Assembly (NCBI GenBank): GCA_965644315.1
Contig: CBFFRQ010000057.1
Location: forward strand, 434,001 to 498,000
DNA from: Caecitellus pseudoparvulus
Taxonomy: Eukaryota > Protista > Bigyra: Bicosoecida
DNA: 64,000 nt
Direction: 5' to 3'
Shown here: positions 1 through 47,363 of the stretch, piece by piece
Layout of the letters: every line of letters begins with the position of its first letter
How positions within the stretch are numbered: the first letter of the stretch is position 1
Notes under the pieces: generated by a model
Seen by the model: the letters and a program-made list of their open reading frames with translations, nothing else
What the model was told of the DNA's origin: nothing
The model's database searches: none
Position numbers and translations under genes: made by a program

Positions 1-2000
1 ACAAGGTGCCAAGTTGGAACTGTCCCTGGGCATCGCCCTGCTTTGCTGCAGCTTCATACCAGCGGGCTGCCTCTGCATCATTTCGCTCCGTTCCCTTCCC
101 ATGCCTGAAGGCGTCTCCGAGGCTGCTTTGGCCGCCAGCATGCCCCTGCTCTGCCGCTGCTTGAAAGCACTCCAGCGCCTGCGCTGCGCTTCGCCGCACT
201 CCCTTTCCTTTCGAGAACATCAAGCCAAGTTTGAAGTGGCCCTCAGCGACTCCCTTCTCTGCGACAAGCCTGTACCAATGCACTGCTCGCTTCAAATCCT
301 TTTTGACCCCACGCCCGGCTTTGTACATGTCTCCAAGTAGGCACTGGGCCTCCACTTCCCCTTTTTCTGCAGCCTCCTTGAGCAGGCGAACTGCCTCAGC
401 CTCATCCTGCGCCACCCCTTGGGCTTGCAAGTACAATTTGGCAAGATGGCACTGCGCCAGGGCATCTCCCATCCCCGCTGCTTCTTGAAGGTATCGTGCA
501 CCTTCCTTCGCAGTGTCCCCTTGGCCATCTTTCTGCGTGTGCATGCAGCCGAGGAAGGTCTTGGCCCTCACATGCCCTTGCTTCGCTGCTGCCTTAAACC
601 AACGCAACGCAACAGCGTCATCCTGGGGCACGCCATATCCGTGCTTGTACATGGTGCCCAAGCTGCACTGCCCATCGGCATTGCCCAAAAGCGCTGCAGC
701 TCTGAAGCACCGCACTGCCTCGCTGTCACTTTGAGATACGCACGACCCAGCCCTGTACATGTCCCCCATGGCAACGTGTCCACCTGCATGCCCTAGCTCT
801 GCTGCAGCTGCGTAGAGCTCAAATGCCCTTTGAGGATTACGCTTTACTCCCCAGCCGTTGCTGTACATGGTCGCAAAGTTGAACAGCCCGTCGCTGTACC
901 TCTGCTCTGCGGCAGCTCGGTACCACCGCACTGCTTCCTTCACATCTTTCCATGTTCCGTGTCCATGACAGAATGCATCACCCAGCTTGCACTGTCCCTC
1001 TGGGTCCCCCTGTTCGGCTGCTGCCCGGTACCAACGTAGCGCTTCAGCCTCATCCTGTGCGATTCCGGTGCCTCCAGCGTACGCATCTCCAAGCGCAACC
1101 TGCCCACCAGAATGTCCCTGCTCTGCAGCTGCCCTGAAGAGGCGGAGCGCTTCACTTTCGTCCTGGCAGACACCAGTGCCAGTCTTGTACATGTCCCCCA
1201 GGCTCACTTGCGCGTCTGCAAGTCCCTGCTCCGCAGCAGCAACGAACCAGCGGTGAGCCTCAGCGTGGTCTTGGGACACACCCTGGCCAAGTCTGTGCAT
1301 GCAGCCAATGTGCCACTGACTGACAGCATCGCCCTTTTCAGCTGCCCTTCGGTACCACTCCGCAGCCTCTGTCCGGTTCTTCGCGGAGCCGGGGCCGTGC
1401 TCCAACATGATGCCCAGCTTTCGCTGAGCCTCAATGAGCCCCTGCTCAGCTGCGGCCCTAAACCACTTAACTGCTGCGGGTAGGTCTTGCATACCTCCAG
1501 TTCCATCCCTGAAGCTGTCTCCTAAAGCAAGCTGCGCTGCAGCGTGTCCTTGGGCTGCTGCCGCCTCGAACCATTGACGTGCACGGCCAGCATCCCGAAC
1601 CCCGCCAATCCCCTCTCCGTACATCTTTCCAAGACAATGCTGCGCTGCTGCTTGACCTTGCTCAGCCATGGAAACAAGCTCGGGGACAACGTCCGCGTTG
1701 CCTTGTTGTGCCATGGAAGCCAAGCTCTCCAAGGCGTCCGCCTGGCCTTGACGTGCAAGCGCCCAAAGTTGCTGCAATGCATCCCCATGTCCCTGCTCTG
1801 CCGCAGCCAAGAACAGGCGCGCTGCACTTGCGCAATCGTGAGCCACTCCATCGCCGCGCATGTGCGCGTCGGCCAAGAGGAACTGGCAAGAGGCATTCCC
1901 TTGCTGGGCAGCAACTTTGAGCCAGTGGCAACCCTCGGCGGCATTCTTCCTTATGCCCACTCCGTGACAAAGCATCCCAGCAAGCTCTAAGCAGTCCACC
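1..2000 (-). repeat. SEL1-like repeat array (108-nt coding period, ~17 units, continues beyond window)
   Basis: Recurrent AQxxLGxMYxxGxGVxQDxxEAxRWxxAAAEQG consensus; the units are diverged from one another at DNA level. Confidence 0.92.
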
Positions 2001-3919
2001 ATGTCACCTTTGCTTGCTGAATCCTTCATGTGCTGCAGGTGCAACATGTCTCGTTTCCCTGTCCACCGCAGACCTGCGTCTCCTCGTCTCTCCCGCAAAA
2101 CCTGCTCTATGCTGCCCTTCACGTCACCACCAGACACCAAACACGGCCAGAGGCCCACCAAACCCCCAACATCGGCATTCTCAGCTCCTTTCAGCGCGAG
2201 CGTTGCAACGCCTTCCATGGCCTGGCTGCTTGTCGTGCCCAGCAAGCTGCCTCCACACAAGAGAACGTCAGCCCGCCACCATCGCATGCCGCCCCACAAT
2301 CCTCGTACCACCTCACCTCCGCCGCGAACGACCGAGTCCCAGACCTGCCCCATAGCACCAGATGAAAGACTGTAGCGAGCCCACTCCATTCCTTCATCAG
2401 AACCACCCACTGACTGCAAAGCAGCAGCCACATCTTGGTGCTCGGCCACTTTCACGGAAGTGCCCCAGGACCCAACTTCCTCAAAGCTCTCCAACATGCC
2501 ACCAAGCGCACAGTCAGCCCCAACCCCCGCCGTTGCGTTGCCGAAAACATCCTGTAAGGCGGCTCCCCATCCACAGTCTTCACCATCCTCCTTCAGCATG
2601 TGTCCGACACTACCCGCGCACAGCCGAACAGTGGCAGCACCCTGCAGAACATCATTCACAACTTCCGCTGTCATCCCTGCACGCTTGCTGCCCTCAACGA
2701 CAAGTACCTTGCCTCCTGAGCCAAGCACGTAGCCAGCTCCAGACAGCTCGCACCGCTGGAGCACCGTAAGGCACTCTCGCGCCAGAGCTTCCTTCGCACA
2801 CACAGCCACATCCTCCCAGGCGTCACAGCCCACCACGTCATCCAATGGAATGCCTGGTGCAACGACTGCTTGAAGGACAAATGTGGTTTGAAGACCAAGT
2901 GGGTTGGCAGCGTTCGCGCCCTCTTGCTCAAGTTGGACGGCGAAACCCAGAACCTCCTGCACAGGCCCGGAGGCTCCAGCTGCCCTAGCCCAGGAGTTTA
3001 GCCTCTGACCAAGAAGCAGCCCGCGCACCACTTCCAGGCACCCCCGTGCCCAAACACCCTCTTCCTTATCACCTGCCCAAACACCAACCCTACATGGCCG
3101 CCGCCACTCAAGCATCAGCCCCCCCCCATCAGCAAGCCAGCGAGCTCGCCCAGCTCGAGGAAGCGCAATGTGCGCAGCACCGTCTGTGCTTTCGCCAGTC
3201 ACTACCGCTACTTCGGGCGTGCCCGTGGCTTCTAGCTCGCCCAGGGCTGAAGCAATACTCCTGAGTTCACCTGCTGCTTCCAGGCTCGACTCGCCGAGAA
3301 CGCGCAAAGAGGCCGCAATGGAGTTCAGCCTTTCCTGGACAGCAGCCATACCCTCGACGACTTGCACAGCCTGGCACTCATTCAGTACCCGTGCACCTCG
3401 GCTCAATGAAGGCATGCAGAATGAATACTCTGCAGCCCACAACGATACACTTCGCAGCAGCGCCTCCTGCCGCGGGGCGGTGGTGCCTGATGATGCACGA
3501 ACCCGACGCCAGGCTGCCACCGTGCCACCATACACACGGTGCAAGCGCTCACCATCTGTCCATTCACGTAAAACAAGAATCTCGCGAACGATGTCTCGCA
3601 CAGCACACTGCGCCAACTCGACACACCTGCTCAACTGCACCAAACCATCCAGAGCGCGCCGGCTCAGCTTGCTCTCCAACTCACCCAGTAGCCGCGTTGT
3701 GCCGGTTTTGATCCTCCCCAGTGCTTCAAGTTGACCCTCTACGCCCAGCCACTCTCCTGCCTCGGGCAAAGCCTCCCCCACCGCGCCAGCCAATCCTAGA
3801 AGTGCAGCGGTAATTTCACCCCGCACAGCCACACTGTCCACACACGGGCCTCGTGCAACGTCAATCAGTGCATCAACACAGCCTGGTCCCATGCTTCCGT
3901 CACTGCGCGGATCAGTCAT
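1..3919 (-). CDS. Helical N-domain + degenerate pseudokinase + SEL1-like repeat protein (3'-partial, >=1306 aa)
   Basis: Manual translation from ATG at 3919 (MTDPRSDGSMG...). I found no in-frame stop down to ~2030, and the frame runs off the window edge, which is why the ORF track omits it. Below ~2000 there are ~17 36-aa SEL1 repeats, e.g. AQVSLGDMYKTGTGVCQDESEALRLFRAAAEQGH. Confidence 0.88.
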   Translation of the reverse strand, partial: MTDPRSDGSMGPGCVDALIDVARGPCVDSVAVRGEITAALLGLAGAVGEALPEAGEWLGVEGQLEALGRIKTGTTRLLGELESKLSRRALDGLVQLSRCVELAQCAVRDIVREILVLREWTDGERLHRVYGGTVAAWRRVRASSGTTAPRQEALLRSVSLWAAEYSFCMPSLSRGARVLNECQAVQVVEGMAAVQERLNSIAASLRVLGESSLEAAGELRSIASALGELEATGTPEVAVVTGESTDGAAHIALPRAGRARWLADGGGLMLEWRRPCRVGVWAGDKEEGVWARGCLEVVRGLLLGQRLNSWARAAGASGPVQEVLGFAVQLEQEGANAANPLGLQTTFVLQAVVAPGIPLDDVVGCDAWEDVAVCAKEALARECLTVLQRCELSGAGYVLGSGGKVLVVEGSKRAGMTAEVVNDVLQGAATVRLCAGSVGHMLKEDGEDCGWGAALQDVFGNATAGVGADCALGGMLESFEEVGSWGTSVKVAEHQDVAAALQSVGGSDEGMEWARYSLSSGAMGQVWDSVVRGGGEVVRGLWGGMRWWRADVLLCGGSLLGTTSSQAMEGVATLALKGAENADVGGLVGLWPCLVSGGDVKGSIEQVLRERRGDAGLRWTGKRDMLHLQHMKDSASKGDMVDCLELAGMLCHGVGIRKNAAEGCHWLKVAAQQGNASCQFLLADAHMRGDGVAHDCASAARLFLAAAEQGHGDALQQLWALARQGQADALESLASMAQQGNADVVPELVSMAEQGQAAAQHCLGKMYGEGIGGVRDAGRARQWFEAAAAQGHAAAQLALGDSFRDGTGGMQDLPAAVKWFRAAAEQGLIEAQRKLGIMLEHGPGSAKNRTEAAEWYRRAAEKGDAVSQWHIGCMHRLGQGVSQDHAEAHRWFVAAAEQGLADAQVSLGDMYKTGTGVCQDESEALRLFRAAAEQGHSGGQVALGDAYAGGTGIAQDEAEALRWYRAAAEQGDPEGQCKLGDAFCHGHGTWKDVKEAVRWYRAAAEQRYSDGLFNFATMYSNGWGVKRNPQRAFELYAAAAELGHAGGHVAMGDMYRAGSCVSQSDSEAVRCFRAAALLGNADGQCSLGTMYKHGYGVPQDDAVALRWFKAAAKQGHVRAKTFLGCMHTQKDGQGDTAKEGARYLQEAAGMGDALAQCHLAKLYLQAQGVAQDEAEAVRLLKEAAEKGEVEAQCLLGDMYKAGRGVKKDLKRAVHWYRLVAEKGVAEGHFKLGLMFSKGKGVRRSAAQALECFQAAAEQGHAGGQSSLGDAFRHGKGTERNDAEAARWYEAAAKQGDAQGQFQLGTL

Positions 3920-4612
3920 GCTTAGAATGGAGGCTTCTGAACGCCGGTCGATTCCAGGGTTGACTTTGGAGCTTATCGCAAGCACTTGCTGCAAGACCGA
4001 TTTCCGCAACACCCCTCAGGGTGAACGCATGGGCCTGATCCCGGCCGACGAAAATAACTTGAAGGCGGGGGCGACCCATGTGTGTAAAGCTTCGCGATCG
4101 AAGTGTTGCTGACTCATTTTGGCCCGATTCTTTGAATGCGAGGACTGGATACCGAGCACACAGCTTTCATGAGAAAGTGCTCGAGTTCAGCCCACAGCAG
4201 AGGTTCTGCACGGCGCAACAGTGGCTTGCAATTTCCCCCTTCTTCTTTTTTTCTCGTCTTTCAATTTCGTGATCGTGCGGTGGGCGTGTGGCACCTGTTG
4301 CCACTGGGAATGGAATCTGACAGGTGCAACACGCTCGCGCAGAGCCAAAACTCTGACTTGAAGTCAAGAATGCCCACTACTTCATGCGCTGAGGCAATGC
4401 ATATGAAGGGCGCTATGCTGCGATTGGATGAAGCAGCAAGGGTTGTCGTTTCATAACGACTTTTCGCGCCTCTTCGGCAACGTCATGGAGTCGAATCATG
4501 GGAGAACACTGCAAGCGTCGAGGTCCATAGAAAACTGGGCTCACTTTCAAGCAAGAGCACACGTAGATGACAGAGACTGCATTCAATGGAGGCCGGAGGC
4601 GCACAGAGGAAG

Positions 4613-7600
4613 TCACCCTTGGTGTCTTGGGAGCGCGATGGTCGGTCGCGCAAGTGCAACCGTTTCGCCTCCCCACACACACAGCGGGTCAGGGAGGGGC
4701 ATCGCATGGGGTACTTCCTCGACCTCCACTGCAACGTGCTTTCCTAACTCCACTGTTTCAGGATCCCACTCTTCGTCCATCCAGTCAGCGTCGTGCAGCA
4801 CCAGGATGGAGTCGTCCTCTGGAGCGGGAAGCCCCACCGCCGCGTAGCAGGCCGCCACTTGCTCCGCAAAAGTCTGAGTTGGATCAAGCTGGACCGCGAT
4901 GGGGCCGGCCAACACTTCACGGAGACCTAAATTAGCATCGCCGGCCAGCTGCATGTTGCCTGCGTCCTGCTCTTCAACACTCACCACGTACAAGGCCACA
5001 TAGCTCGCCTGCCTTGGACGAACGTGGATACTTTGCAGCACCACGCCGGACAGGTCACTACCAGGCGCCTTGGTTCCAGCAGAGGTGCACAATTCCACGA
5101 CGAACTTGTCACGGGAAGATGCTGGAACGTGCACCAAGTCGAAAATTGCCCCCACGTCCACCCGCACGCGGATGTCGAGCTCGATCTCTGTTTGCGCTTC
5201 GAGCTCCCGCCCAGTTGGGCCGTCGCCAGGCAGGCCCAGCAGCAGCAGGGGAACTGTTTGCATGCATGCATCCGTGCTCACCACACCCACACTGAAGCCT
5301 TTCTCGCTCGGCGAGCGCAGGGCTGTCTGGAATGAAGCAAAGTTGGCTTCGTTCAGGGCCACTGGAGTCGGGATGCTAGCCCATTTGAGCATGAAGCAGT
5401 GCTCACTCGGAGGGCTGCGCTTCTTGAGGCCTTTCAGCACTGCAGCTTGGAACTCTGGGATGGACCCCAGCATGCTATCTGTCAGCCTGATCCTTCTGCT
5501 TCTTTGTGAACTGCGCAAGAAGCAGGAGTCCGAGCTTGGATCACTCGCACCAAGCAAAGTCAGGGAGAGTGTGATGCCTTTGCTTTCCTGGCCAGCACTG
5601 CTTGGCGCGTGCTGCTCAACCACGTCGTCTACGCCGTTTGTAAACTGGATCACATTGAAGTCTGACAAAACATCACGCAGGTCGCCATCCAAAGCCTCGC
5701 GGACACGCGAAGCGAGGTGCATGCTTTCGTCGTCCAGCGTGCCACAGGCCAAGGCAGACGCCTTCAGGTGCGCCAAAGCATCGATCACATCCTGCTCACA
5801 CTCAAGCGGCATTTCACCGGGAGACTGACCGATTCGACGCATCGGCTGTTCTTTCTTGGCCGCTGCCCCAGCCTGTGGGTGTCCACCGCCAAAATGTGAG
5901 CTTCCTCGTCCCCCAGTGCGCAATGGCTGAGGCATGGCTTGCCCTCCGCGTGACTGCGCTTGGGGCATTGCTTGGCCTCCAGTTGGCTCCAAGCGCGCAG
6001 CTTCCCTCTCTTGCTCCCGCATTTGCTTGTGAGCGTCCAATTTCAGAGCCTCATCTGCTGCCAAGGCGTGACCGAAGGGTGCGCTGTCCAAGAAGTCTGG
6101 TGTGCTTGCGTCTGACGCAAAACGGAGCTTAGGAGCATATTTGCCGCGCGAGCCCATCCCAGAGCTGTCACCCTGCTTCAAATCTTCCGCGCTCTGCAAG
6201 ATCGCCCGAAGGCGTTGAGAAAGTTGCTGGATGGTATTGGTGACAAGGACAAATGCGCCTACAAGCACGCCGTCGGCGGCCGACCCGTCAGCCTTGGTGA
6301 TGCCCAGCAAAACATGAGCCATGGAGTTCTTTGGCTTCTTTTCTCCGTACAGAGCTGCGTGAACGAATTGGTTATCGGCCAGCAGCGACTCTGAGGAGCT
6401 TTGGGACAGCCACGAGACGGATGCTTCCGCGAGTGCGTTCTTGAGGTGCTGCAGCATGTCCAGGTCACTCTGAGCACTCTTTGTGTTACTGTCAGTAACA
6501 AGCTCCTCAATCTTGCGAAGACGTTCGTCCACTTCTTCCATGATTGACGCTGGAAGAGCGTTCTCAGCCGCCTCCTTTTCCAGGTGCTTCTGGAACTGTC
6601 GCACGAAGGACCTGTAGCTCCCCACTGCCAGTCGTCTGAGCCTTCGTGAGGTACCGGACACTTTCCCGCTAAACAAGGCCTTGTCGAGGCTGGTAGCTAG
6701 GATGCCTTCCTCAAGCAGCTTCCTCACGGAATCTGTGGCGGAGCGCAGGAGTTCGCGCCACTGCTTGTCTGTGAGTGACGAAGCCATGATCTTGCTGTCC
6801 TTCCACTCAACACCAGCTTCTTCGCAGAGCAGCAGGGCTTGTTCAAGCAGGGACTGCTCCTCGGACACTTCGGGAGCTTCGGAAACTTCGGGAGCTTCGG
6901 GCTCTTTCTCTGCATGATCTTCATGTTGGTCAGACTGCGAACCCTCCTTGGACTCCGTTCCCGCAGGAACATCCAGAACTGGCTTGACCTCGCTGGGCGC
7001 CGCTTGCTCACTCTTTTGCTTGAACACAAAATCCTCTCCTAAATCTGACACCTCCAACCGCATTTTCCCCCGCATGATCAGCGGGAGGAGGAAGCGGGCC
7101 AGGTTCTCAATGTCCACGCTCACGTGCCCAGCAGCAAAGGGCTGCGAGTCTGCGGAGGCAGCTGTCCGTGCTGCGAGCCACTTTGCACGCGCCTCGTCAC
7201 TGCTCAAGCGAAGCTTGTACTTCTCCGGCAGGAATACATCCAGAGGTGGCTCACCTGGACTCGGTTTGGGAACCCGTGTGGCAGTGTAGCTGAAGCGTGT
7301 CCCGCATCCACGCTTCTTTCCGCTCTGCTTCTCGTCTTTCAGCCGTTTCGCAGTCTCGGCGGCACTCTCATGCGAGTGCTGGCCGCATACTCCTGCGTCA
7401 CAGTACATCGTCCTTTCCATGAGGCGCTGGCAGTCCGGGTTCGGGCAGATGCTGTACTTTTGCTCATGCATGAGCTGCTGCGTGCTTCGCCCTTCGTCGA
7501 AAGCAGCTTCTCGCTCCTGCTGATCAAGAATGTCGGCCTCCTCCAATGCCTTTGAGTCGTGCCCAGGTTCCACATCATTGTACTCCACATCCGCTTCCCA

Positions 7601-16600: not shown

Positions 16601-19600
16601 CGCAGTCGTGTACGCTTCAATCAGCGTATCTGCAGTGAAGCCCTCATGAACGTGAAAGCTGCTCACGTTTGAGCCTGCTACTTTGCTCAGCTTCTGTAGA
16701 GCTTCGGTGGTTTTGCCACACCCCGGGCCGCCTGTGATGACCTCAAGTCCGGCCAGGTGTTGCATGTTTTGGCCAATGTCTGCAGTCAAGGACTGGATCT
16801 CAGCCTCAGAAAGCTCCGGGCACAGCTGCAGCTCGGAAAGGTCAGAGAACAACCCTTCACCTGCAGGAGAAGTAAAGATGAGGTGAACATGCACACGCAA
16901 AGGTTGCCCGGCCACAGCAGCAGCGAGTTGCTCCAGCACAGTGGTCGGCAAGGTGTTGGGGGCAAGCACGTATGCGTAGCCAAAAGAGGCGTCAGCGCAC
17001 GCCAAGCAGGACAAGAAGTCACTCATTTCAGCAGGTGTTGTTGAGGCAGAGCATGAGAGCACTTGGTAGGGGGCAGGAAACGGATCCTCTTCTGCCCGGG
17101 AATGCAACAGGCACCCAGCAAGACAACTTCGCAGCGACGCGCCGGCACACTGCTGCCTGCTGGCATGGATGGGATCGGGCTCTTCCGGGTACTGTTGTGC
17201 GCTTTGCAGGGCTTTAGCAAAAGCCTCAGCCGCCCAATTGACTGCCTCACGTGCTGTGGTCACTTGCGCCAACGACTCACAGCTATCCGCCATGGAAGCT
17301 GCAACAGCGCTGCGGTTTTCGGCAGCGGGGCCAATTCTTGCAGCCAAGTCGAACACCGCAACCAAAGAGTCCAAGTGCAAGTCCTTCTGAACTGCGGCTT
17401 TCTCTGCATCGGGCTCAGGTTCGCTCGTGCCTTCCCCTGAGGCAGCACCGCCAGGAGCAGCCCTGTCCTTTGCCATGGTCAACACCAGTTCGAGAAGGCC
17501 CAGCAGCTGCTGTCGAGGCAAGTGAGACAGGTGTGGGGACAGACTGCGAGCTTTCTCCAGCGCTTCTTTCCACGCTGTCAACTCCTCCTCCAAAAAGCCA
17601 CAGAAAGCCTCCGTGGCCACAAGCAAGTTGCCTTCGTCAGACTCCACTCGCAGTGGGATGTCTCCCACCTTGGCCTGGTAGGCAGGATGCCCGAGCTGCT
17701 GCAAGTTGGACAACAGCTTCGCACAGAGCTGAGATGCTTCATAGCTTGCGATGAAGTCATCAATCGCCTGATTCTTGACGGACGTTCGAGACAGACGCGC
17801 ATTGAAAGCGTTCTCGTTCAACTGCTCTGGGGAGAGCACAAAGCTGGCTGATTCGCCTTGCGAGTACTTGAGCTGCACGCTTGCAGGACCACCCAGCGAT
17901 GACGTTCGAGCGATGAAAGTTCCGCTTTCGACGAAAACGGGGGCTTGCAACAGAATTGCCCCGTTGCCGGAGCCTGACGATACCCCTTCCAACGCGTTCC
18001 GGAGCAGATCCCAGTTTGCCCCCAGCTCTTCAAGGCTGATCACTAACTGGTCAGCCGTAGCAAAGGGCCCATTCGTGACAGCAGCATTCAGAAGGTCTCT
18101 CAATTTGTCCAGAGTAAGACTCGAGTGCGCCGCTGCTCCAGCTGCTCGCATGTGGGGCAGATTGGCCAGGAGGTCCTTCTGGCCCGCAAACTTGTCCAGA
18201 AGCTGCAAAACGAAGGGGTTCGCAGCTGAAGCTTTCTTCGCGATGTCAATCTTCTCGTCCAAGCTTCCATCGTGCTCATGCAGGAAGTCCGCTACCTTCT
18301 GGAGCTCAGCCAGCGCTCTGATTCCCCGGAGCTCGACCGAAGAGCAAGACGGAAAGGCGGCCCTGACTTCGTCAAGCAGCACCACGCAGTTACTCATTTG
18401 AATGCCTGCCATGTTGTTGATGCAGGGGGACAGCTTGGACTCGACGCGCCCAGCTTCGTCGCCGGACCACACTCCGAACTTGAGAAGAGCCCGGATGCTC
18501 GGGAAGATTACACCCTTGAATGCCCACAGCTCTAAGCCAGCATTCAGGGCAGCTAGGCGAGCTTCGAGGCTGGTTGTGGACGACCCTGGCTCGAGCTGGA
18601 AGAAAGTCGCCACCGATCGCATTTCCGTCGAAAGATCCGCCGAGTCAAACTTGGTGTCTGTCAGCAACCCAGTGAGTTGTGTGCCTGTAAAATCACCAAG
18701 CGTGCCCGTATCAGCCAGGACAAGCTCTTTCAATGCCTTGGTCGCCTCACTGACTCTGGCATCCACTCTCTTTTCAAGTGATTCCCCGTCGCGTGGCCGA
18801 GCGCGCTCGTTTGCGGAAGACAGCAAGCTCAGAAACAGCTGATTCAGCGGGCTGCTAAAGTGGCGAAGGGCTGTGTATGTCTCACGGGTCACATTCAGCG
18901 CTGAGCGGGCTTCGCGCACACAAGCGGTGGCGTCACACAGCAACATCTCCGACAGCTCGTCCAGTGTGGCAAGGCCAGTCAGCTCTGCGTCAGGCATGGC
19001 ATCCTTCAGGAGGATGAGGACGGCACCATGCTCATGAAGCAGGGCCGTGGTGTCTGCAAGCTCTGCCTCACACGCTGTGCGAGCCTCCTGAAACGTGCCG
19101 GGCTCCTCAACGCACAAGCTGTCGAGCGCCAGGGCGATGTCATCGTCCCACTCCTCTTCCCATTGCTGCACTTGCGATACAGAGACGCTTCGGTCTTGAA
19201 AGGAGATGAGTAGAGTACGAATGGACTTGCGGATACCTTCCACACTTTGAAGCATGCCAGGTAGTTGTGGTGAAGCGGTTGTCGCAAGAAGCAGCTCAGC
19301 CAGTCGAGGTGCATGGTGCCAAGTCAACCAGCCAGCTTGACGTCCGCTCTCCCCGATGCGCTTCAGGCAGTACAGCCCCAAGTCCTCTGATACAGACGAC
19401 AAGGCTCCTTGGGTCTTCACAATTTGCTCCAGTACTGCTTTCACGACTTCAAGTTGTGTGTCTATGTCTCCTGCACTTGACAAAAAGCAGGCGGTTAACG
19501 ATTTGCACAGCTTGCGGTATGAGTCCTGCAAAGACGGGGACGCGCTGCCCAAGGCGTGCTCAGCTTGCAAAATTATATCGCAGTTAAGCATACCCATGTT

Positions 19601-22600
19601 CGACAGCAAGGAGCGCAGGGCTCCTACAGGTGCGCTTTGACTGCCCAAGCGCGTGTCGAGCACAGTATCTGTGGAAGGTGCTCCAGAAGAAGCGTGCAGG
19701 GCCAAAAGGTGTGCGATAGCAGCAACCAGCTCCTTGTACTGATCCGAAGTTGGTGCCCTCGGGCCACTCAATGTGTCGCTCAAGACTTCCACCAAGGGAT
19801 GCTTCAGCCGCTGTCCAAGCTTGTCTGCAGGCAGCTTGCATAACTTGTCCCACACCGGAAGTGAGTCCCCCACAAAGTGCTCGACCGATGACCCAATCTC
19901 GCTCGTGACTCCGCCTACACTCCTTAGGACTTTGGACAAGATCCACTGGTGTGCAATCACAGCTGACTGTCGCACCTGAAGCAGAGGCAAGAGCGGGGCG
20001 AGTTGGGCACCAGGCGTCCCACAAACCCAGTCCCAATTCTCCGGAGACCACAGTTTAGCTCCAGCTTGCTTCACAAACCAGCCAGGAACCCCGTCAATTG
20101 AGAGCACGGTGCACAATGCAGTGATGCGGGAATCTTCTGGAGCCTCATCGAACACCTTCAATAAGCAGGTCCATGCCATTTTGAAAAGTGAAATGGAAAG
20201 AAGAATTGCCGTTTCACCCTTTTCCGCCTTGTAAGTTGTTGCCAAGCGCACGAGCTTATTAATGATGCCAGGAATCGCGGAGGGGTCCGCGAAGTGCAAC
20301 GGCTCATAGCGCTCAGCCACGTGCATCAAGACATTCTTCTTGTCCGACTCTTCCAAAGCTGCCAAAGCGCTTGCACACAGAGGCTCCTGCAAGAAATCCT
20401 GAACAAAGTGCCCGAGGAATGACTCAAATGTGTCGGCACCCGCTGTGCACAGATCAAAGCACTGCACCAACAGTTCCTTCGCAGCGTCCAGCCCAGCGTC
20501 CCCCTTGAACTCGTTATGCAGGCACAGCACAGCGGAGAGTGCAGACAATGTTGATGCCTTCAAATTCCCACTTTCAGTTCCAGATGTGGGCGCAGTCAGC
20601 AATCCCGACCAGCCGAGGATGTCATCCTCACGCCGAGCCCTTCTCAGCATGACAACCACCGTGGCGAGCACAAGCTGCGTTGGCACAGACCAAGCAGCTG
20701 CTACATGTCCCTGTTCGATGCAGTCCTGCAGCAAGCTGGCAGCGGACAGTGCGTAAGTCTCAGTGACTGCAAAGATCTCAATGGTCCAATCCCACAGTTC
20801 GCGAATAACTGCTGGCTGCATGGTCTCCAGCTCCACCTGCTGCGGAGTGGCAACTTCGAAGAAAGCCTTACAGGCACGCTCAAAGGCGCAAACCACATGT
20901 CCCTTAACTTCGTCTCGAATGCCGTCGCAATGGAGAATCACCTGAAGTGCTGGAAGAAGGCCAATCATCTCGGATGGAGCTGCGCCTGCTCCTCGCTCCA
21001 GTGCCTGGCAGACCCGCTGTGCAAACTCTTCCTGGAAATGCTCCGCCCAAGAAGCCACATCAGTGAGCTCGTCAGCATGCTCATGTGACAGAAAAGCCAC
21101 GCTACCCTTGTTGCCGAGTTGCGCTGCATGGTTTAAGCGTTGCCGAAGGGTGACAAGAACCTCTGGGTCGACTATCGGAGACTCGAAGCCAGAATCACTA
21201 ACGGAACCATCTGCCGTCTGAAACGAATCACTATCAATGTTTCCGCGGTCACGACTTGCAACGGCCGGCTGTTCTTGGCTTATGATGCCCTCGACGCCAA
21301 CTTCAGAGTCAAGCCCGCGCAACTGACCGCCACCTTGTGCAGACATTCCAAACCGTGAGCCGGCCTTGGTCACGAGGGCCTGAAGCGCGACACTGTCAAG
21401 CGGGCCCAGCTCATCTCCCCCACGCCCGTCTTGCTCTGCACCGGAAGATCGACGATCTGAAGAAAGGCCGCCTTGCGCCTTGCTGCCCTGCTTGTGACTG
21501 TCGGTAGCCTTGCTACCCCACACCACCCACTTGCCCCCGCGCAGCTTGTACGGCACACCCCCCACATCCACCACCCTCGCAGTGTTCCCATCAGACACCA
21601 ACGCAAGCCCATCATCCAGCACGTAGTACCCAATGTCACCGTTCCAAGTCACCCTCCCTGTGTACCACGCCGGCACTGCAGGCGCCTCACACGCCGGATC
21701 TGCTGCCGCCGCCGTGTCTTGAGATCCAGCATGTGGCGTCCTGGCATCCCCATCGCCAGCACCAGGCGACACCGCCGCACTGCCACCGCCACCTTCAACA
21801 CTCTCCTGCCCCGACCCCGCTGGCACTGCAGGCGCCTCACACGCCGGATCTGCTGCCGCCGCCGTGTCTTGAGATCCAGCATGTGGCGTCCTTGCATCCC
21901 CATCGACAGCACCGGGCGACACCGCAGCACTGCCACTGCCACTCTTGCCACCCCTCACCACCCACTTGCCCCCGCGCAGCTTGTACGTCACACCCCCCAC
22001 ATCCACCATTCTCGCTTTCTTCCCATCCGACACCAACGCGGCACCATCATGAAACACATAGTGCCTGATGACACTGTCCCACGTCACTGCATCTTTGAAC
22101 TCCACAGGAACAGCAGGTGCCTCAAACGTGCCTTCACGTTCTGCATGTGGCGTCCCACTGTCCCTCTCGACAGCATCAGGCGACACCGCCGCACTGCCAC
22201 CGCCACCTTCAACACTCTCCTGCCCCGACCCCGCTGGCACTGCAGGCGCCTCACCCGCCGGATCTGCTGCCGCCGCCGTGTCTTGAGATCCAGCATGTGG
22301 CGTCCTGGCACCCCCATCGCCAGCACCAGGCGACACAGCCGCACTGCCACCGCCACCTTCAACACTCTCCTGCCCCGACCCCGCTGGCACTGCAGGCGCC
22401 TCACACGCCGGATCTGCTGCCGCCGCCGTGTCTTGAGATCCAGCATGTGGCGTCCTGGCATCCCCATCGCCAGCACCAGGCGACACCGCCGCACTGCCAC
22501 TGCCACTCTTGCCGCCCTTCACCCCCCACTTGCCCCCGCGCAGCTTGTACGGCACACCCCCCACATCCACCACCCTCGCAGTGTTCCCATCAGACACCAA

Positions 22601-23512
22601 CGCAAGCCCATCATCCAGCACGTAGTACCCAATGTCACCGTTCCAAGTCACCCTCCCTGTGTACCACGCCGGCACTGCAGGCGCCTCACACGCCGGATCT
22701 GCTGCCGCCGCCGTGTCTTGAGATCCAGCATGTGGCGTCCTGGCATCCCCATCGCCAGCACCAGGCGACACAGCCGCACTGCCACCGCCACCTTCAACAC
22801 TCTCCTGCCCCGACCCCGCTGGCACTGCAGGCGCCTCACACGCCGGATCTGCTGCCGCCGCCGTGTCTTGCGATCCAGCACGTGGCGTCCTGGCATCCCC
22901 ATCGACAGCATCAGGCGACACCGCCGCACTGCCGCCGCCGCCACCTTCAACACCCTCCTGCCCCGACTTTGTTTGCTCTGCGGGTCGCTGCTTGTCAGAA
23001 AGTACACCTGAATCACGTTCAGATTTGTTTCTTGGATGGCTTTCATGAGTTGGTGACGTGGTGCGAGGTGGAAGCTGTGGTGGATGAGCTGATGTTTGTC
23101 GCAGTTCCTCTTCAACCTGCTGGCCAGGGGGCTGTGGCGGGTCAGGGCTAACAACAGATGCATGGATGGTTGCGAGCCCTTCTTCAATGGAAGGGCGCAG
23201 CTCGATGTCATCGTATCCGCTTGCCTTCAACTTCAGCTCGTGAAGGGTGTACTTGACTTTCCCTTCCTTGTAAGTTCGCTTGAGGGCGCTCGGGAAAGTG
23301 AACACCTGGCCATCGTGGGCGACGTACTTTTGGATTTCCTCCACCCAGAAAAGCAAGCCAAAGGTTCTGTGGCGCACAACATTCAAGCGAGTTTGCTTGA
23401 GCTTGAGCTCGAACCACTCCTCGTCGCTGTCCCAGTGAACATCCTCTTGGTCTGCACTTGGAACAGTGAGTCCTTCAAGATCGGACACAGGGGGAAATTG
23501 TTCGGCTGCCAT
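4613..23512 (-). CDS. RNF213/mysterin-like giant multi-AAA+ ATPase, putative E3 ubiquitin ligase (6299 aa, single ORF)
   Basis: RNF213-type motifs in the correct order: GGPGCGKT (~16720), GDTGVGKT (~15255), VLFIDELNT (~14330), ITGPPGCGKT (~13300), YQCSQATS, VVVMDEAGL (~13075), MSNSILDAAKTNR, LRDFVYF, MYDLLNRRY, VHQDFRLVV, PSPLLNRFSK. CTD-like segments FVRSWNLL and DIENLARFLLPLIMRGKMRL follow. Confidence 0.9.
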   Translation of the reverse strand: MAAEQFPPVSDLEGLTVPSADQEDVHWDSDEEWFELKLKQTRLNVVRHRTFGLLFWVEEIQKYVAHDGQVFTFPSALKRTYKEGKVKYTLHELKLKASGYDDIELRPSIEEGLATIHASVVSPDPPQPPGQQVEEELRQTSAHPPQLPPRTTSPTHESHPRNKSERDSGVLSDKQRPAEQTKSGQEGVEGGGGGSAAVSPDAVDGDARTPRAGSQDTAAAADPACEAPAVPAGSGQESVEGGGGSAAVSPGAGDGDARTPHAGSQDTAAAADPACEAPAVPAWYTGRVTWNGDIGYYVLDDGLALVSDGNTARVVDVGGVPYKLRGGKWGVKGGKSGSGSAAVSPGAGDGDARTPHAGSQDTAAAADPACEAPAVPAGSGQESVEGGGGSAAVSPGAGDGGARTPHAGSQDTAAAADPAGEAPAVPAGSGQESVEGGGGSAAVSPDAVERDSGTPHAEREGTFEAPAVPVEFKDAVTWDSVIRHYVFHDGAALVSDGKKARMVDVGGVTYKLRGGKWVVRGGKSGSGSAAVSPGAVDGDARTPHAGSQDTAAAADPACEAPAVPAGSGQESVEGGGGSAAVSPGAGDGDARTPHAGSQDTAAAADPACEAPAVPAWYTGRVTWNGDIGYYVLDDGLALVSDGNTARVVDVGGVPYKLRGGKWVVWGSKATDSHKQGSKAQGGLSSDRRSSGAEQDGRGGDELGPLDSVALQALVTKAGSRFGMSAQGGGQLRGLDSEVGVEGIISQEQPAVASRDRGNIDSDSFQTADGSVSDSGFESPIVDPEVLVTLRQRLNHAAQLGNKGSVAFLSHEHADELTDVASWAEHFQEEFAQRVCQALERGAGAAPSEMIGLLPALQVILHCDGIRDEVKGHVVCAFERACKAFFEVATPQQVELETMQPAVIRELWDWTIEIFAVTETYALSAASLLQDCIEQGHVAAAWSVPTQLVLATVVVMLRRARREDDILGWSGLLTAPTSGTESGNLKASTLSALSAVLCLHNEFKGDAGLDAAKELLVQCFDLCTAGADTFESFLGHFVQDFLQEPLCASALAALEESDKKNVLMHVAERYEPLHFADPSAIPGIINKLVRLATTYKAEKGETAILLSISLFKMAWTCLLKVFDEAPEDSRITALCTVLSIDGVPGWFVKQAGAKLWSPENWDWVCGTPGAQLAPLLPLLQVRQSAVIAHQWILSKVLRSVGGVTSEIGSSVEHFVGDSLPVWDKLCKLPADKLGQRLKHPLVEVLSDTLSGPRAPTSDQYKELVAAIAHLLALHASSGAPSTDTVLDTRLGSQSAPVGALRSLLSNMGMLNCDIILQAEHALGSASPSLQDSYRKLCKSLTACFLSSAGDIDTQLEVVKAVLEQIVKTQGALSSVSEDLGLYCLKRIGESGRQAGWLTWHHAPRLAELLLATTASPQLPGMLQSVEGIRKSIRTLLISFQDRSVSVSQVQQWEEEWDDDIALALDSLCVEEPGTFQEARTACEAELADTTALLHEHGAVLILLKDAMPDAELTGLATLDELSEMLLCDATACVREARSALNVTRETYTALRHFSSPLNQLFLSLLSSANERARPRDGESLEKRVDARVSEATKALKELVLADTGTLGDFTGTQLTGLLTDTKFDSADLSTEMRSVATFFQLEPGSSTTSLEARLAALNAGLELWAFKGVIFPSIRALLKFGVWSGDEAGRVESKLSPCINNMAGIQMSNCVVLLDEVRAAFPSCSSVELRGIRALAELQKVADFLHEHDGSLDEKIDIAKKASAANPFVLQLLDKFAGQKDLLANLPHMRAAGAAAHSSLTLDKLRDLLNAAVTNGPFATADQLVISLEELGANWDLLRNALEGVSSGSGNGAILLQAPVFVESGTFIARTSSLGGPASVQLKYSQGESASFVLSPEQLNENAFNARLSRTSVKNQAIDDFIASYEASQLCAKLLSNLQQLGHPAYQAKVGDIPLRVESDEGNLLVATEAFCGFLEEELTAWKEALEKARSLSPHLSHLPRQQLLGLLELVLTMAKDRAAPGGAASGEGTSEPEPDAEKAAVQKDLHLDSLVAVFDLAARIGPAAENRSAVAASMADSCESLAQVTTAREAVNWAAEAFAKALQSAQQYPEEPDPIHASRQQCAGASLRSCLAGCLLHSRAEEDPFPAPYQVLSCSASTTPAEMSDFLSCLACADASFGYAYVLAPNTLPTTVLEQLAAAVAGQPLRVHVHLIFTSPAGEGLFSDLSELQLCPELSEAEIQSLTADIGQNMQHLAGLEVITGGPGCGKTTEALQKLSKVAGSNVSSFHVHEGFTADTLIEAYTTALCGDSSLKVWGLHLSLTEGADLAMLDSILAHLALCNCLGDSAHGTVSGFRPGFKLHVVVELPAIVKHGKQPAWPPEAGTTEPRDHPFLPKLPSLSLLPATWTATHSGLQHIIIDEAWRDACLAIGLASALGGATDPVHQAFQESVKDIREMGRLVRSKLPELTDDACRHILHQGLTSLDVLRALQSQPSAGGGWRTGTPTVGHLGAFVKVLSRLWRKLLEAGEHNAARIPPPADQQMKRRGRGLSHAGTASSIVNLTPTPELFSLQKKHLKAFNAEGFSDENLAKVGALARLVSMCIDDFWRPVLNVILSESCRVATDSSEKVRYGSVFSSVMDTGVKALSDRENKVLDWSIMVSSRDRQEPPATVFGIDSSHPFVLSVCEDRAMDEVKLAHMRMAIAPTLGMLNTSLLQPALESRGFILTPFVLMNMLNVHQRCLSRQPVLMSGDTGVGKTFIMQAYSTVRNATFMQKLNVLPIIALAMRRYLVHATSAAVKAAPEDELDATVEHVAERLAAIGQLRNIEKARAFVAGSEGSGAAATQRGPKWAVPVLAESAFTFNLQTSSSARDLSGAIQAVVEASEGEEQSSFVYMLLFVLAVVLEHSPALSKLIPPEVATLATDAVEHYMKSKAPAPIAMASVKDIKRAGLLPGMNFRDGLLKKLHEKTQELENARSGQAAARRRSRAAAPKLSVTATMLSDAVRLVQAAVTAQPPPQYERHLMHDGVTPDVWRAIVNNAKANVQALTELASDGDDFVYVLFIDELNTAGALHMIAEAFSNHTMDGEPLPDDLFLAGAINPHGFRAGKSKSSVDQTNVPSRLPTGAAHAGAGASEHEHLATTSFVVKHLPGPLERLLVNSPKLTTGVEEAFIAGIKERIMQQASSGRLPNIVAQLRVGAGAVLMQEEAGVMAAFQQGLDAFGSMLSFAQEKVRSYDLNRMHLSFRDLVRATNLFKWLLQLKVHPTLRGSSLPDKTRVVNPFLPPGIHVTSTELLFAHVVQVALVAIGCVYWMRLPGEGHKGYDGSDLPDLRSDFSAALRQHCEGVGIVCEDVATTVSAATRHLFSKISFRPLGLAETVPLLENFFSAVLCVNVEPAMSLLITGPPGCGKTLAVGMCAKNSQGRESGSPLFRQLKRMKVLNYQCSQATSAEEIEALYSTAYEQHAGHTRSGSAHIRLVVVMDEAGLPNEKQHALKAAHDTWDDPNGVPTILMSNSILDAAKTNRCMHVQQTAASSHDMRLLCSALLLLPRNRPSVSRIIVKADEPLEERLQRSYDLVCGIADAFQLVQDAVRCFKWLHLRDFVYFCRFLRYELGQKPLDTLTPKILLLALQRCMQVVESSPDAMDEFEAIARTFMDGRVTSSSETGGVVATPGCGFEVVMSREEVVDMKRQISATELKPDILRAMESNIRAVFADDPSESPHRHTMIIDRSDTEAGVHWLFQRGILQQDLTIEVNVADLGVDAEQLRTAEVLRQVKAAAEGGKTLLLVNCNQVIFTAMYDLLNRRYHTISTGSGHAYYANITIGALSLAVAVHQDFRLVVHVPFWKLPELPSPLLNRFSKFSLSAAQILKASAHSYLESFEFLQGEVAAQSRLLQNVLHGVRDFVAFVCSSQPEAAFTGFDSSETIPALILQVLSKAAESGGTSPAMTDDALALELVERCNMELLSILRPDFVMQSGVLKRLPSSYIDVYMKEQEHFSGAQFLRNAIAASGRGSNARPLSLLTCRSSTGVLQLQQDEERASIMLGCPVVHVTKGHREVKWKEVSDLGSGQPCAFVAALSDCPSAATAEHLVDEFLEVCSRVATADRSPDAVLPTLIFTINEHVHKGSHPQVALMKRMLSRKWGALHERLRAVQPRAVLVLHTGSDERNLVERFPFVPTGLDWQHTVADAVDEVSESDAAAQASADEEAKQWLLAAAQRELSKDISWFKSKLRPSVESGVEEACSNLDASVMGMKAETLAKRGVVLSVAIYQGFPPLRKKAREVMQESVAHGVLLDALMDMFALVWRGLVGTLTSDAAEGVWSAAVTESMVVHLRKRLQDLSFGIVQAFLARSARDFGFEALCKLHTEGSSPLLLEFAAEAVKSVLNIEVGRHVSLTSVSRKHGREKVPSPVVPAAAELPFGFTVLRSLKLVSDACKQRVEGLEEQFALARSLLAADGDVQLGFEHMQSCFELLQERDELMLLLSRDFLKLYCNVVEVDDADFVSEGRHLQGFAKAVVPMMPHEFDHIAGELLQRARALATQHIFPGSVPLTFFLRHRALTRFVSEAIASVYSSRSLGAAPAVPGSGAASGAGRILDAVQAAVEGLHIGPESESQMCEWLGRVAAARQGPCRTAEGVCHDEQLFGKCVQVVCMSEVLMRAPEGILSLLIARTRSAANDPGLRGQLPLDTMLFVLGQFASLSADVPDGFLEEFRCMMSSAFLACFRWILPGCEGGFGSVTAKQAVIRAVLFMESGAALTLPGGKAPVSLLRLLNKDAPSALPCLARVQLLSQLHTHPGFSEQLAQVSFKTGSATFMPTALSIALSRQVAALYGWEVAHLETHASYDLLVWMLAKHTSEHVLRIGPTNTCPLEPAAAEVLSSRHADARSPLDKARFAAQSLVFCELLAAMLGSNPDHESVRARPVKEAMKRLQGASPAWGAVVMAHIAGSERGYDRLTRVLAHESVLKDLGLEAWHLACFAESSEEAKAVCAEFVSTPLSADDFHDKLVALVKACSSKVLALRPALGRCAAGLKSHRCAHWLRSPTTQLVLGLEAAAGDAKLKAEEGMELPGPLLAGAVLHELVDGQHGNSLHFATHIPVMLSFYQWCNEELAGKVSEAEAWELPMVDALSRERLDQVTVDVGRKKLDEFVRSWNLLQATFGMYEAVCGHQAELEQGIPRLSVGNEDGFKQLMVSDVLSFSFTQSEMERALPLRMLRERLVKSQNAMMELDATRHLRAMTALTGINRGGCLLEATHGGRALKHVASTAVSFRELVMHTGEVNPYVDQAEGEGAPLSLVDKLRRLIPFFLRWEADVEYNDVEPGHDSKALEEADILDQQEREAAFDEGRSTQQLMHEQKYSICPNPDCQRLMERTMYCDAGVCGQHSHESAAETAKRLKDEKQSGKKRGCGTRFSYTATRVPKPSPGEPPLDVFLPEKYKLRLSSDEARAKWLAARTAASADSQPFAAGHVSVDIENLARFLLPLIMRGKMRLEVSDLGEDFVFKQKSEQAAPSEVKPVLDVPAGTESKEGSQSDQHEDHAEKEPEAPEVSEAPEVSEEQSLLEQALLLCEEAGVEWKDSKIMASSLTDKQWRELLRSATDSVRKLLEEGILATSLDKALFSGKVSGTSRRLRRLAVGSYRSFVRQFQKHLEKEAAENALPASIMEEVDERLRKIEELVTDSNTKSAQSDLDMLQHLKNALAEASVSWLSQSSSESLLADNQFVHAALYGEKKPKNSMAHVLLGITKADGSAADGVLVGAFVLVTNTIQQLSQRLRAILQSAEDLKQGDSSGMGSRGKYAPKLRFASDASTPDFLDSAPFGHALAADEALKLDAHKQMREQEREAARLEPTGGQAMPQAQSRGGQAMPQPLRTGGRGSSHFGGGHPQAGAAAKKEQPMRRIGQSPGEMPLECEQDVIDALAHLKASALACGTLDDESMHLASRVREALDGDLRDVLSDFNVIQFTNGVDDVVEQHAPSSAGQESKGITLSLTLLGASDPSSDSCFLRSSQRSRRIRLTDSMLGSIPEFQAAVLKGLKKRSPPSEHCFMLKWASIPTPVALNEANFASFQTALRSPSEKGFSVGVVSTDACMQTVPLLLLGLPGDGPTGRELEAQTEIELDIRVRVDVGAIFDLVHVPASSRDKFVVELCTSAGTKAPGSDLSGVVLQSIHVRPRQASYVALYVVSVEEQDAGNMQLAGDANLGLREVLAGPIAVQLDPTQTFAEQVAACYAAVGLPAPEDDSILVLHDADWMDEEWDPETVELGKHVAVEVEEVPHAMPLPDPLCVWGGETVALARPTIALPRHQG
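21515..22970 (-). repeat. Coding mosaic tandem repeat: ~7 x 150-nt (50-aa) Gly/Ala/Asp spacers interleaved with 3 copies of a ~55-aa aromatic module
   Basis: TGCCCCGACCCCGCTGGCAC recurs at 22221 and 22371 (150 nt apart). The module WYTGRVTWNGDIGYYVLDDGLALVSDGNTARVVDVGGVPYKLRGGKW is duplicated near-identically 999 nt apart. Confidence 0.95.
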
Positions 23513-25691: not shown

Positions 25692-25966
25692 ATACTGCAC
25701 TGACCCACTGTTGTGGGGAAGGCCGCGCTTGGGTTCATCCCTCTGCTGGCAAGGCTCGAGCTTGGCTGAGTGGCTATTCGGAAGCCTAGACATGCTGGGC
25801 GAGAAGTGCCCACAAAGACACGAGCTTTTGAATGCAAGTGCTTTAGGGTTTGCAAGCACCCCTTTGGGCTGTGCCACCTGCCATCGTGAGGAGGGCGCCA
25901 CATGCCACTCGCAACGAATGCTGGATTGTACAGATCCAGACAGCAGACCCCCTGACAGCACAACGC

Positions 25967-47312: not shown

Positions 47313-47363
47313 AGCCCCCCCCCGTGTGCCACAAAGGTGTGTGCATTGAATGCAGCTGTCCCG

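What the first reader, a model, noticed from the sequence alone, without database searches (positions are those of the whole stretch)
1..23512. Candidate protist innate-immunity cassette: RNF213-like sensor/E3 next to an MLKL-like pseudokinase-SEL1 gene
Seen: two adjacent, co-oriented, uninterrupted reading frames ~700 bp apart in a lower-GC block. Each carries a repeat array (SEL1 array; mosaic N-terminal array). Known: animal RNF213 ubiquitylates the surfaces of intracellular pathogens, and MLKL (helical bundle + pseudokinase) executes lytic cell death. Inference: a linked sense-tag-kill module against viruses or bacteria in a unicellular eukaryote, with both partners showing non-animal architectures.
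Basis: partly seen in the sequence, partly recalled or inferred. Interest (0 to 1): 0.88.

Follow-up and report, generated by a model that had tools for sequence, protein, structure and literature searches.

The report
Protist RNF213 with swapped catalytic domain
A marine single-celled eukaryote has a giant relative of the human pathogen-tagging enzyme RNF213 whose usual catalytic zinc finger is replaced by one borrowed from Parkin-type ligases, a swap shared by a whole unstudied protist branch of the family; the neighbouring 'MLKL-like' gene is real but looks like a chance neighbour in a fast-evolving gene island rather than a fixed partner.

Summary
Both reading frames are real and adjacent (693 bp apart), and the junction recurs in independent marine metagenome assemblies, so it is not a chimera. 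The 6,299-aa protein is an RNF213 homologue (PDB E 1e-21; three Walker A motifs as in RNF213) with no RING and no RZ finger. Instead it carries an RBR-type Rcat (RING2) module with Cys5371 in register with the catalytic cysteines of HOIL-1, HHARI and Parkin. That cysteine is kept in 22 of 23 homologues from other protists, which group together on a tree; two short subtelomeric paralogues have Ser there. The neighbour has Sel1 repeats behind a helical plus kinase-like region, but no tool confirmed a kinase or MLKL fold. The 'cassette' is weakly supported: 1 of about 7 RNF213-like loci and 1 of 11 neighbour-type genes are paired, the RNF213-like gene was copied without the neighbour, no other species shows the link, and RNA contigs cover only the RNF213-like gene. 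An immune role is inferred, not shown. The scan noted paralogues of both genes on other contigs, and the Rcat motif on this window.

The parts
4613..23512 (-). ORF1: intronless RNF213-like giant AAA+/E3 protein, 6,299 aa
   Evidence: phmmer vs PDB best hits RNF213, E 8.5e-22; RNA contigs on its 3' part
23183..23443 (-). N-terminal aromatic beta-rich module (res ~24-110), the only N-terminal piece kept by the short paralogues; 34-51% identical between paralogues whose cores are 92-95% identical
21500..22981 (-). Mosaic repeat array (res ~178-671): seven ~50-aa Gly/Ala/Pro-rich units and three ~55-aa aromatic beta modules (res 283-338, 473-526, 616-671); no Pfam match; candidate variable sensor
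11264..17080 (-). Dynein-like AAA+ core (res ~2145-4083) with Walker A at res 2261, 2749, 3401 and Walker B acidic pairs at res 3062-3063 and 3479-3480 (AAA2, AAA3, AAA4 equivalents)
   Evidence: RNF213 has Walker A in AAA2-4 (bioRxiv 10.1101/2021.05.10.443411)
6923..8272 (-). Distal E3 module (res 5081-5530), homologous in its first 145 residues to the region of animal RNF213 that follows the RZ finger
   Evidence: hhalign probability 92%, E 6e-7 to Mytilus RNF213 residues 5092-5234; AlphaFold pLDDT 77
7277..7552 (-). Inserted RBR-type linker helix plus Rcat (RING2) module, res 5321-5412; predicted Zn ligands C5356, C5361, C5376, C5403
7400..7402 (-). Cys5371, predicted catalytic cysteine; Ser in paralogues C184 and C197
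   Evidence: in register with the catalytic Cys of HOIL-1, HHARI and Parkin RING2; kept in 22 of 23 homologues
4616..6175 (-). C-terminal extension (res ~5780-6299) absent from animal RNF213; no Pfam or PDB match
3920..4612 (.). 693-bp spacer; similarity to the paralogous loci stops at 4552-4565
1..3919 (-). ORF2, 1,382 aa (ends 226 bases left of the window): helical region + kinase-like region + Sel1 array; one of 11 genes with this N-terminus
3215..3919 (-). ORF2 predicted all-helical N-terminal region (res 1-235, eight helices); no MLKL_N or HeLo match
2360..3112 (-). ORF2 putative degenerate kinase-like region (res ~270-520): helix/strand order fits a kinase, no VAIK lysine, HRD or DFG; fold unconfirmed
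   Evidence: secondary structure; negative
1..1969 (-). ORF2 Sel1 repeat array (res ~651-1382)

Best explanation
ORF1 is a member of a protist branch of the RNF213 family that works as an ATP-gated, transthiolating ubiquitin ligase but uses a different catalytic part from animals. Steps: (1) the variable N-terminal beta-module array binds a target surface (inferred by analogy to the CBM20/stalk of RNF213); (2) ATP binding at AAA3/AAA4 switches the ligase on (motifs shown, function inferred from RNF213); (3) an E2~ubiquitin docks on the C-terminal scaffold as in RNF213, since there is no RING1 (inferred, untested); (4) ubiquitin passes to Cys5371 of an RBR-derived one-zinc Rcat module and from there to the target (domain identity shown by sequence and model, catalysis inferred). 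Short subtelomeric paralogues with Ser at that position and no stalk would be non-catalytic helpers or decoys. The most likely job is cell-autonomous defence in a bacterivore: tagging escaped bacteria, parasites or virus factories for autophagy. ORF2 belongs to a separate, ~90-member family of helical + dead-kinase-like + repeat (Sel1 or ankyrin) proteins that may be receptors; the two genes are neighbours because both families collect in the same low-GC accessory islands and subtelomeres, not because they form a fixed cassette.
For: RNF213 homology and three Walker A motifs. No RING or RZ motif in ORF1 or nine related protist proteins, while the same scan finds both in Mytilus RNF213. Profiles of the distal E3 region hit only RING2 domains in PDB: HOIL-1 E 0.03, with its linker helix; HHARI, Parkin, HOIL-1; Pfam IBR_1 in 11 of 25 members, best E 6e-5. 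The modelled insert (pLDDT 88-97) superposes on the IBR/RING2 fold of Parkin, rmsd 1.6-2.0 A over ~40 residues. Proteins hit through the insert alone are RING-IBR-Rcat ligases. Cys kept in 22 of 23 homologues, 9 with the RBR Cys-x-His dyad. Rcat-bearing members split from animal, sponge, amoebozoan and Chromera members with SH support 0.99. Paralogues are intact and under purifying selection, dN/dS 0.28-0.30, 0.15-0.18 in the insert. No fixed linkage. RNA contigs only on ORF1.
Against: Single PDB matches of the insert are individually weak (E 0.03-5). ORF1 itself has Ala, not His, two residues after the Cys (as HOIL-1 also lacks that His). Foldseek/VIA gave no significant match of the whole modelled region to RNF213 (RNF213 only at E 3.6; chains over 3,000 aa were not aligned by VIA). 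E2 docking residues were not traced. Nothing here shows immune function; dN/dS shows no positive selection in the core. Two of about seven RNF213-like loci do have a pseudokinase-repeat gene within 5 kb, more than a uniform null gives (P about 0.016).
Confidence: 0.6

Rival explanations
1. One reading: ORF1 senses and tags a pathogen, ORF2 is its dedicated MLKL-like executioner, and the two are inherited and regulated together.
For: Real, co-oriented adjacency kept in wild populations; shared low GC3; the C173 paralogue also has a same-strand pseudokinase-ankyrin gene 3.2 kb downstream, and a second such gene lies tail-to-tail with ORF2; uniform-null P 0.016-0.025.
Against: ORF1 was duplicated three times without ORF2; 10 of 11 ORF2-type genes have no RNF213-like gene on their contig; the C173 neighbour is a different subfamily, not the ORF2 orthologue; no link in 7 loci from other organisms (flanks of 0.5-10 kb); RNA contigs on ORF1 only; MLKL fold unconfirmed; repeat-sensor genes number in the hundreds and crowd contig ends, so the uniform null is too lenient.
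Confidence: 0.12
2. ORF1 is a transthiolating ligase of this Rcat type but with a non-immune job (lipid droplet, glycan, organelle or protein quality control), and its copies spread simply by subtelomeric recombination.
For: Core under purifying selection; expressed in ordinary marine RNA samples; HOIL-1-type Rcat domains ubiquitylate glycogen-like sugars in housekeeping roles (PMC12203941); paralogues lie 17-29 kb from telomere repeats beside retroelements.
Against: N-terminal sensor region differs far more between paralogues than the core and varies in length, as does the positively selected N-terminus of simian RNF213 (PMC11549300); location among expanded repeat-sensor genes.
Confidence: 0.2
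3. The inserted zinc module is a non-catalytic IBR-like ubiquitin- or protein-binding domain, and ORF1 is an AAA+ scaffold or uses another active site.
For: IBR and Rcat share one fold, and the structural match was to Parkin's IBR; two paralogues under purifying selection lack the Cys; some RNF213-like proteins (sponges, Chromera) show no catalytic finger at all.
Against: The extra, non-ligand Cys is nearly invariant and often followed by the RBR His; sequence hits are to RING2, not IBR, and to the C-terminal Rcat of protist RBR ligases.
Confidence: 0.08

Closest known systems
RNF213/mysterin (human, mouse; PDB 6TAX, 8S24, 9G08)
   Same: Giant single chain, dynein-like AAA+ core with Walker A in AAA2-4, helical stalk, E3 module homology after the RZ position, variable N-terminus.
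   Different: No RING, no RZ finger, no CBM20 match; RBR-type Rcat inserted about 400 residues C-terminal of the RZ site; N-terminal beta-module array; ~500-aa C-terminal extension; multi-copy with short Cys-to-Ser paralogues.
RBR ligases HOIL-1, HHARI/ARIH1, Parkin (Rcat/RING2 domain)
   Same: Linker helix followed by CP-x-C, a non-ligand Cys in catalytic register, Cys-x-His dyad in many homologues, IBR/RING2 fold.
   Different: No RING1 or IBR; only the first zinc site is kept (as in a class of protist RBR proteins found here); embedded in an AAA+ giant.
ZNFX1 and MYCBP2 (other non-canonical transthiolating E3s; own knowledge)
   Same: Large scaffold that delivers E2~Ub to a small zinc domain with a catalytic Cys.
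   Different: Different scaffold and different catalytic domain (RZ; RCR).
MLKL and fungal/plant HeLo-like or 4HB-kinase proteins; kinase-Sel1 proteins of early-diverging fungi (own knowledge)
   Same: ORF2 layout: helical N-terminus, kinase-like middle without catalytic motifs, here followed by Sel1 repeats.
   Different: No detectable sequence or fold match to MLKL, HeLo or kinases in any test run; eight predicted helices rather than a four-helix bundle plus brace; family restricted to this organism and its close kin in the databases searched; Sel1 and ankyrin arrays are interchangeable in the family.

Membership tests
RNF213 family | Dynein-like six-AAA core homologous to RNF213 | tested here: met
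   phmmer vs PDB E 8.5e-22, four collinear stretches; next best midasin E 1e-3
RNF213 family | Walker A in AAA2, AAA3, AAA4; Walker B in AAA3, AAA4 | tested here: met
   res 2261, 2749, 3401; DE at 3062 and 3479
RNF213 family | RING domain in the E3 module | tested here: not met
   no Pfam RING hit, no motif; control Mytilus protein positive
RNF213 family | RZ finger with catalytic Cys/His | tested here: not met
   no PF20173 hit, no motif; control positive
RNF213 family | E3 core / CTD scaffold with E2 docking site | tested here: inconclusive
   pre-CTD region homologous (hhalign 92%); CTD proper and docking residues not alignable
RNF213 family | CBM20 domain in the N-terminus | tested here: not met
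   no Pfam hit in res 1-3000 or in the N-terminal modules; a very divergent copy cannot be excluded
RNF213 family | Ubiquitylation of pathogen surfaces | not testable with these tools
   needs biochemistry and infection assays
RBR ligase | Rcat/RING2 with catalytic Cys | tested here: met
   (first zinc site and catalytic Cys only)
RBR ligase | RING1 and IBR upstream of Rcat | tested here: not met
   no other Cys cluster in ORF1
MLKL | N-terminal four-helix bundle plus brace (MLKL_N / HeLo-like) | tested here: inconclusive
   helical by prediction, but no Pfam hit at E 10, model pLDDT 39, only generic bundle matches
MLKL | C-terminal pseudokinase domain | tested here: inconclusive
   element order fits a kinase and catalytic motifs are absent, but Pfam, PDB, Foldseek, ESM Atlas and hhalign were all negative
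MLKL | Activation by an upstream kinase and membrane permeabilisation | not testable with these tools
   needs experiments
Conserved two-gene immune cassette | Linkage repeated among paralogues and in other species | tested here: not met
   1 of ~7 and 1 of 11 in this genome; 0 of 7 loci elsewhere
Conserved two-gene immune cassette | Co-expression or co-induction | tested here: inconclusive
   two RNA(-like) runs have contigs on ORF1, none on ORF2; contigs show presence only

The most novel reading that the evidence does not exclude
Protists run an RNF213-type cell-autonomous immune system in which the AAA+/E2-docking chassis is ancient and the catalytic tip is interchangeable (RZ in animals, RBR Rcat in this clade), with catalytic and Cys-to-Ser decoy paralogues, and in this organism it signals with a ~90-member family of helical-pseudokinase-repeat receptors/executioners to give a tag-and-kill response against bacteria or giant viruses.
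Probability: 0.15. Interest if true: 0.9.

Novelty: new variant of a known kind. Interest (0 to 1): 0.64.

Why it matters
RNF213 is the only known ligase that ubiquitylates bacterial LPS, and its RZ finger is treated as a class of its own. A protist clade in which the same chassis carries an RBR Rcat instead would show that the scaffold, not the catalytic finger, is the conserved unit, would give the first RBR-type active site that works without RING1, and would push RNF213-type surveillance back to unicellular eukaryotes. It is directly testable with one point mutant (C5371S) and an E2~Ub probe, and natural Ser paralogues already exist. I found no paper on RNF213 homologues in protists or on an Rcat in RNF213 in the library searched, which lacks most subscription papers.

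Tried and rejected
Chimera or contaminant join: rejected (eukaryotic intronless housekeeping genes on both sides; paralogues on telomere-bearing contigs). Pseudogene status of paralogues: rejected for the three read (open frames, dN/dS about 0.3). Viral origin: no relatives of ORF2 in viral contigs; only weak generic AAA hits for ORF1. Hypervariable Sel1 array in ORF2: not seen against three wild alleles (5-6 replacement vs 3-13 silent changes). Kinase/MLKL fold for ORF2: Pfam, PDB phmmer and hmmsearch, ESM Atlas (twice), AlphaFold with 5 sequences, Foldseek, VIA and hhalign to the window's own kinase all gave nothing; this is absence of evidence from a shallow alignment. ORF2 relatives in JGI metagenomes: none. 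Fold of the C-terminal extension and N-terminal modules: no match. Searches were slips of frame or size; searches found no usable pattern; IQ-TREE runs failed at display, so the tree is FastTree only. P0003 was too long for the contig look-up.

Full report
Observation. The window holds a 6,299-aa uninterrupted frame at 4613-23512 (-) and, 693 bp downstream on the same strand, a second frame from ATG 3919 that leaves the window and ends 226 bases further on, 1,382 aa in all. The second carries a Sel1 array. The first begins with a mosaic of seven ~50-aa low-complexity units and three ~55-aa aromatic beta modules. Both genes sit in a ~30-kb block of lower GC (GC3 0.57-0.66 against 0.71-0.84 in the flanks) that also holds an ankyrin-type relative of ORF2 (tail-to-tail with it, just left of the window), a beta-propeller gene and an S28 peptidase. 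The rest of the window is ordinary intronless eukaryotic genes (DENN, adenylate cyclase, importin, PLAA, kinase, H+-ATPase). The genome is 30.6 Mb with TTAGGG-type telomeres and occurs in marine metagenomes. I did not identify the species.

The join is real. Three ENA metagenome contigs are 98.6-99.0% collinear with the locus, and L021 runs from the 3' end of ORF1 through the spacer and ORF2. One 8.5-kb contig of another run spans 2500-4739.

ORF1 is an RNF213 homologue. Its middle matches RNF213 in PDB at E 8.5e-22 over four collinear stretches, far ahead of midasin. It has three Walker A motifs (res 2261, 2749, 3401) and two Walker B pairs, the pattern of RNF213 AAA2-4 (bioRxiv 10.1101/2021.05.10.443411). 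Full-length relatives include unnamed metagenome proteins, a Mallomonas annulata protein, sponge proteins and Mytilus RNF213. ORF1 has neither RING nor RZ finger; the same motif scan finds both in the Mytilus protein.

What replaces them. About 400 residues after the place where animals have the RZ finger (Mytilus RZ at 4832; ORF1 5081-5225 aligns with Mytilus 5092-5234, hhalign 92%) ORF1 has an insert of a long helix and a zinc module (res 5321-5412). A 4-sequence profile of the region hit only HOIL-1 RING2 in PDB, including its preceding helix and with Cys5371 on the catalytic cysteine (the C-to-A mutant entry 8EAZ aligns Ala there). A search of 1.8 billion representatives found about 20 more proteins with the whole region; the 25-sequence profile hits the RING2 domains of HHARI, Parkin and HOIL-1, and Pfam IBR_1 in 11 members. 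The four predicted zinc ligands and the extra Cys are nearly invariant; the extra Cys is kept in 22 of 23 homologues and 9 have the RBR Cys-x-His dyad. Proteins hit only through the insert are ordinary RING-IBR-Rcat ligases whose Rcat likewise keeps one zinc site, the likely donor class. AlphaFold models the insert at pLDDT 88-97 and it superposes on Parkin's IBR, the fold shared with RING2, at 1.6-2.0 A over ~40 residues. Whole-region fold searches gave no significant hit. Seven loci from other organisms (GC 37-68%) carry both the AAA core and this module in one gene. On a FastTree of AAA4-5 (468 columns, 18 rows; P0017 left out, no overlap) the Rcat-bearing proteins are separated from Chromera, amoebozoan, sponge and mollusc proteins with support 0.99; the tree is unrooted, so order of events is open. 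I reached this reading, before seeing that a first-stage note (s1-668527) had flagged the same motif.

Mechanism. In mouse RNF213 the E2 docks on the C-terminal domain and hands ubiquitin to a non-ligand Cys of the RZ finger, gated by ATP binding. The simplest reading is that ORF1 keeps this logic with an Rcat as acceptor: the insert lies shortly before the region equivalent to the CTD (by the rough alignment), and no RING1 exists to bring the E2. Domain identity is shown; catalysis, E2 docking and substrate are inferred.

Family in this genome. AAA-core matches lie on C173, C184, C197 (92-95%) and twice on C62 (39%); further pieces lie on C129, C95 and C64, about seven loci in all. C173, C184 and C197 begin with telomere repeats and carry retroelement-like frames. 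C184 and C197 lack residues ~110-1850 and have Ser for Cys5371 while keeping all zinc ligands, yet are under purifying selection (dN/dS 0.28-0.30), which fits non-catalytic helpers; the change is probably one event. The first 120 residues are only 34-51% identical between paralogues and the array differs in length, echoing the fast-evolving N-terminus of simian RNF213 (PMC11549300). Synonymous divergence in the insert is two to three times the gene average, which suggests patchwise exchange between paralogues.

ORF2. Its N-terminal 660 residues define 11 genes at 33-48% identity and are distantly related to 78 genes that mostly carry ankyrin repeats instead; two of those carry Sel1 arrays (C13, C154), so the repeat part is swappable. 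Outside this organism and its wild populations nothing was found. By eye, and from recalled kinase consensus only, residues ~270-520 follow the kinase order (helix C, strands 4-5, helices D-E, strands 7-8) without catalytic motifs, and the predicted secondary structure agrees. No tool confirmed it: the model has pLDDT 39 and Pfam, PDB, Foldseek, VIA, Atlas and hhalign were negative. An earlier follow-up (s1-652547) calls the ankyrin-type family a novel helical domain plus dead kinase; I could not verify that. 'MLKL-like' therefore describes a layout, not a shown homology. Against three wild alleles the Sel1 array is conserved, and the kinase-like part has 8-10 replacement against 2-3 silent changes, small numbers.

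Linkage. None of the other ten ORF2-type genes is on a contig with an RNF213-like match. The three close ORF1 paralogues share sequence only to 50-60 bases past the stop (loose ends at 4564-4568), so ORF1 was copied alone. C173 has a same-strand ankyrin-type gene 3.2 kb downstream, and C184/C197 have an ankyrin-only gene just upstream. Two of seven loci with a pseudokinase-repeat neighbour within 5 kb has P about 0.016 under uniform placement, but these genes and several hundred ankyrin genes crowd contig ends and low-GC islands, so shared compartments explain it without a functional tie. Seven loci from other organisms show no ORF2-like or Sel1 neighbour in 0.5-10 kb of downstream flank. In one metatranscriptome and one run guessed to be RNA, contigs cover 4601-8398 and none lies on ORF2 or the spacer; they may come from any close paralogue, and absence in contigs proves little.

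Limits. The literature library lacks most subscription papers.

Verdict. The cassette is unlikely (about 0.12). The durable result is a protist RNF213 clade with an RBR-type Rcat in place of the RZ finger: a new variant of a known kind, easy to test, interest 0.64.

Noticed in passing
L003:7044-9638 (+), 360 bases left of the window: Ankyrin-type member of the helical + kinase-like family, tail-to-tail with ORF2; the pair is kept in wild contig L020 under purifying selection (dN/dS 0.18).
   Followed up: partly
G000 C13:967512-972473 and C154:18722-24340: Genes with the ankyrin-type N-terminus but Sel1 arrays: repeat sensors are swapped within the family; C13 is 76% identical in the N-terminus to the ankyrin-bearing C173 gene.
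   Followed up: no
window 14324-15268 (-): About 310 residues separate Walker A and Walker B of AAA3, far more than in RNF213; a large insertion in the main ATPase.
   Followed up: no
window 4616-6175 (-): C-terminal extension of ORF1 with no database match; part of it resembles a PB1-type beta-grasp by eye only. Paralogue C197 stops 131 residues earlier.
   Followed up: partly
P0074, P0095, P0098, P0103, P0120, P0121, P0127, P0134: A large class of metagenomic RBR ligases whose Rcat keeps one zinc site and ends in G-C-G-x-x-F-x-W, often with ZZ, WWE or UBA domains.
   Followed up: partly
P0006 (Oscarella), P0008 (Sycon), P0007, P0054 (Chromera): RNF213-like proteins in which no RING, RZ or Rcat motif was found; their catalytic part, if any, is unknown. 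P0006 ends in SAM domains.
   Followed up: no
C197:1348-10480 (L017/L007), C184:1319-16168, C173:1964-11112: Subtelomeric retroelement-like frames interleaved with telomere repeats, and a repeated 634-aa frame shared at 99.9% by C173 and C184.
   Followed up: no
C197:21640-24144 (-) and 44782-52668 (-): An ankyrin + multi-pass membrane protein, and a >2,600-aa probable surface protein 99% identical between C197 and C184.
   Followed up: no
window 24189-27304: A signal-peptide beta-propeller gene and an S28 serine carboxypeptidase share the low GC3 of the island.
   Followed up: no
G000 C114:47-5058 and C32:34238-39945: Near-identical tandem Sel1 units at ~600-bp period on two contigs.
   Followed up: no
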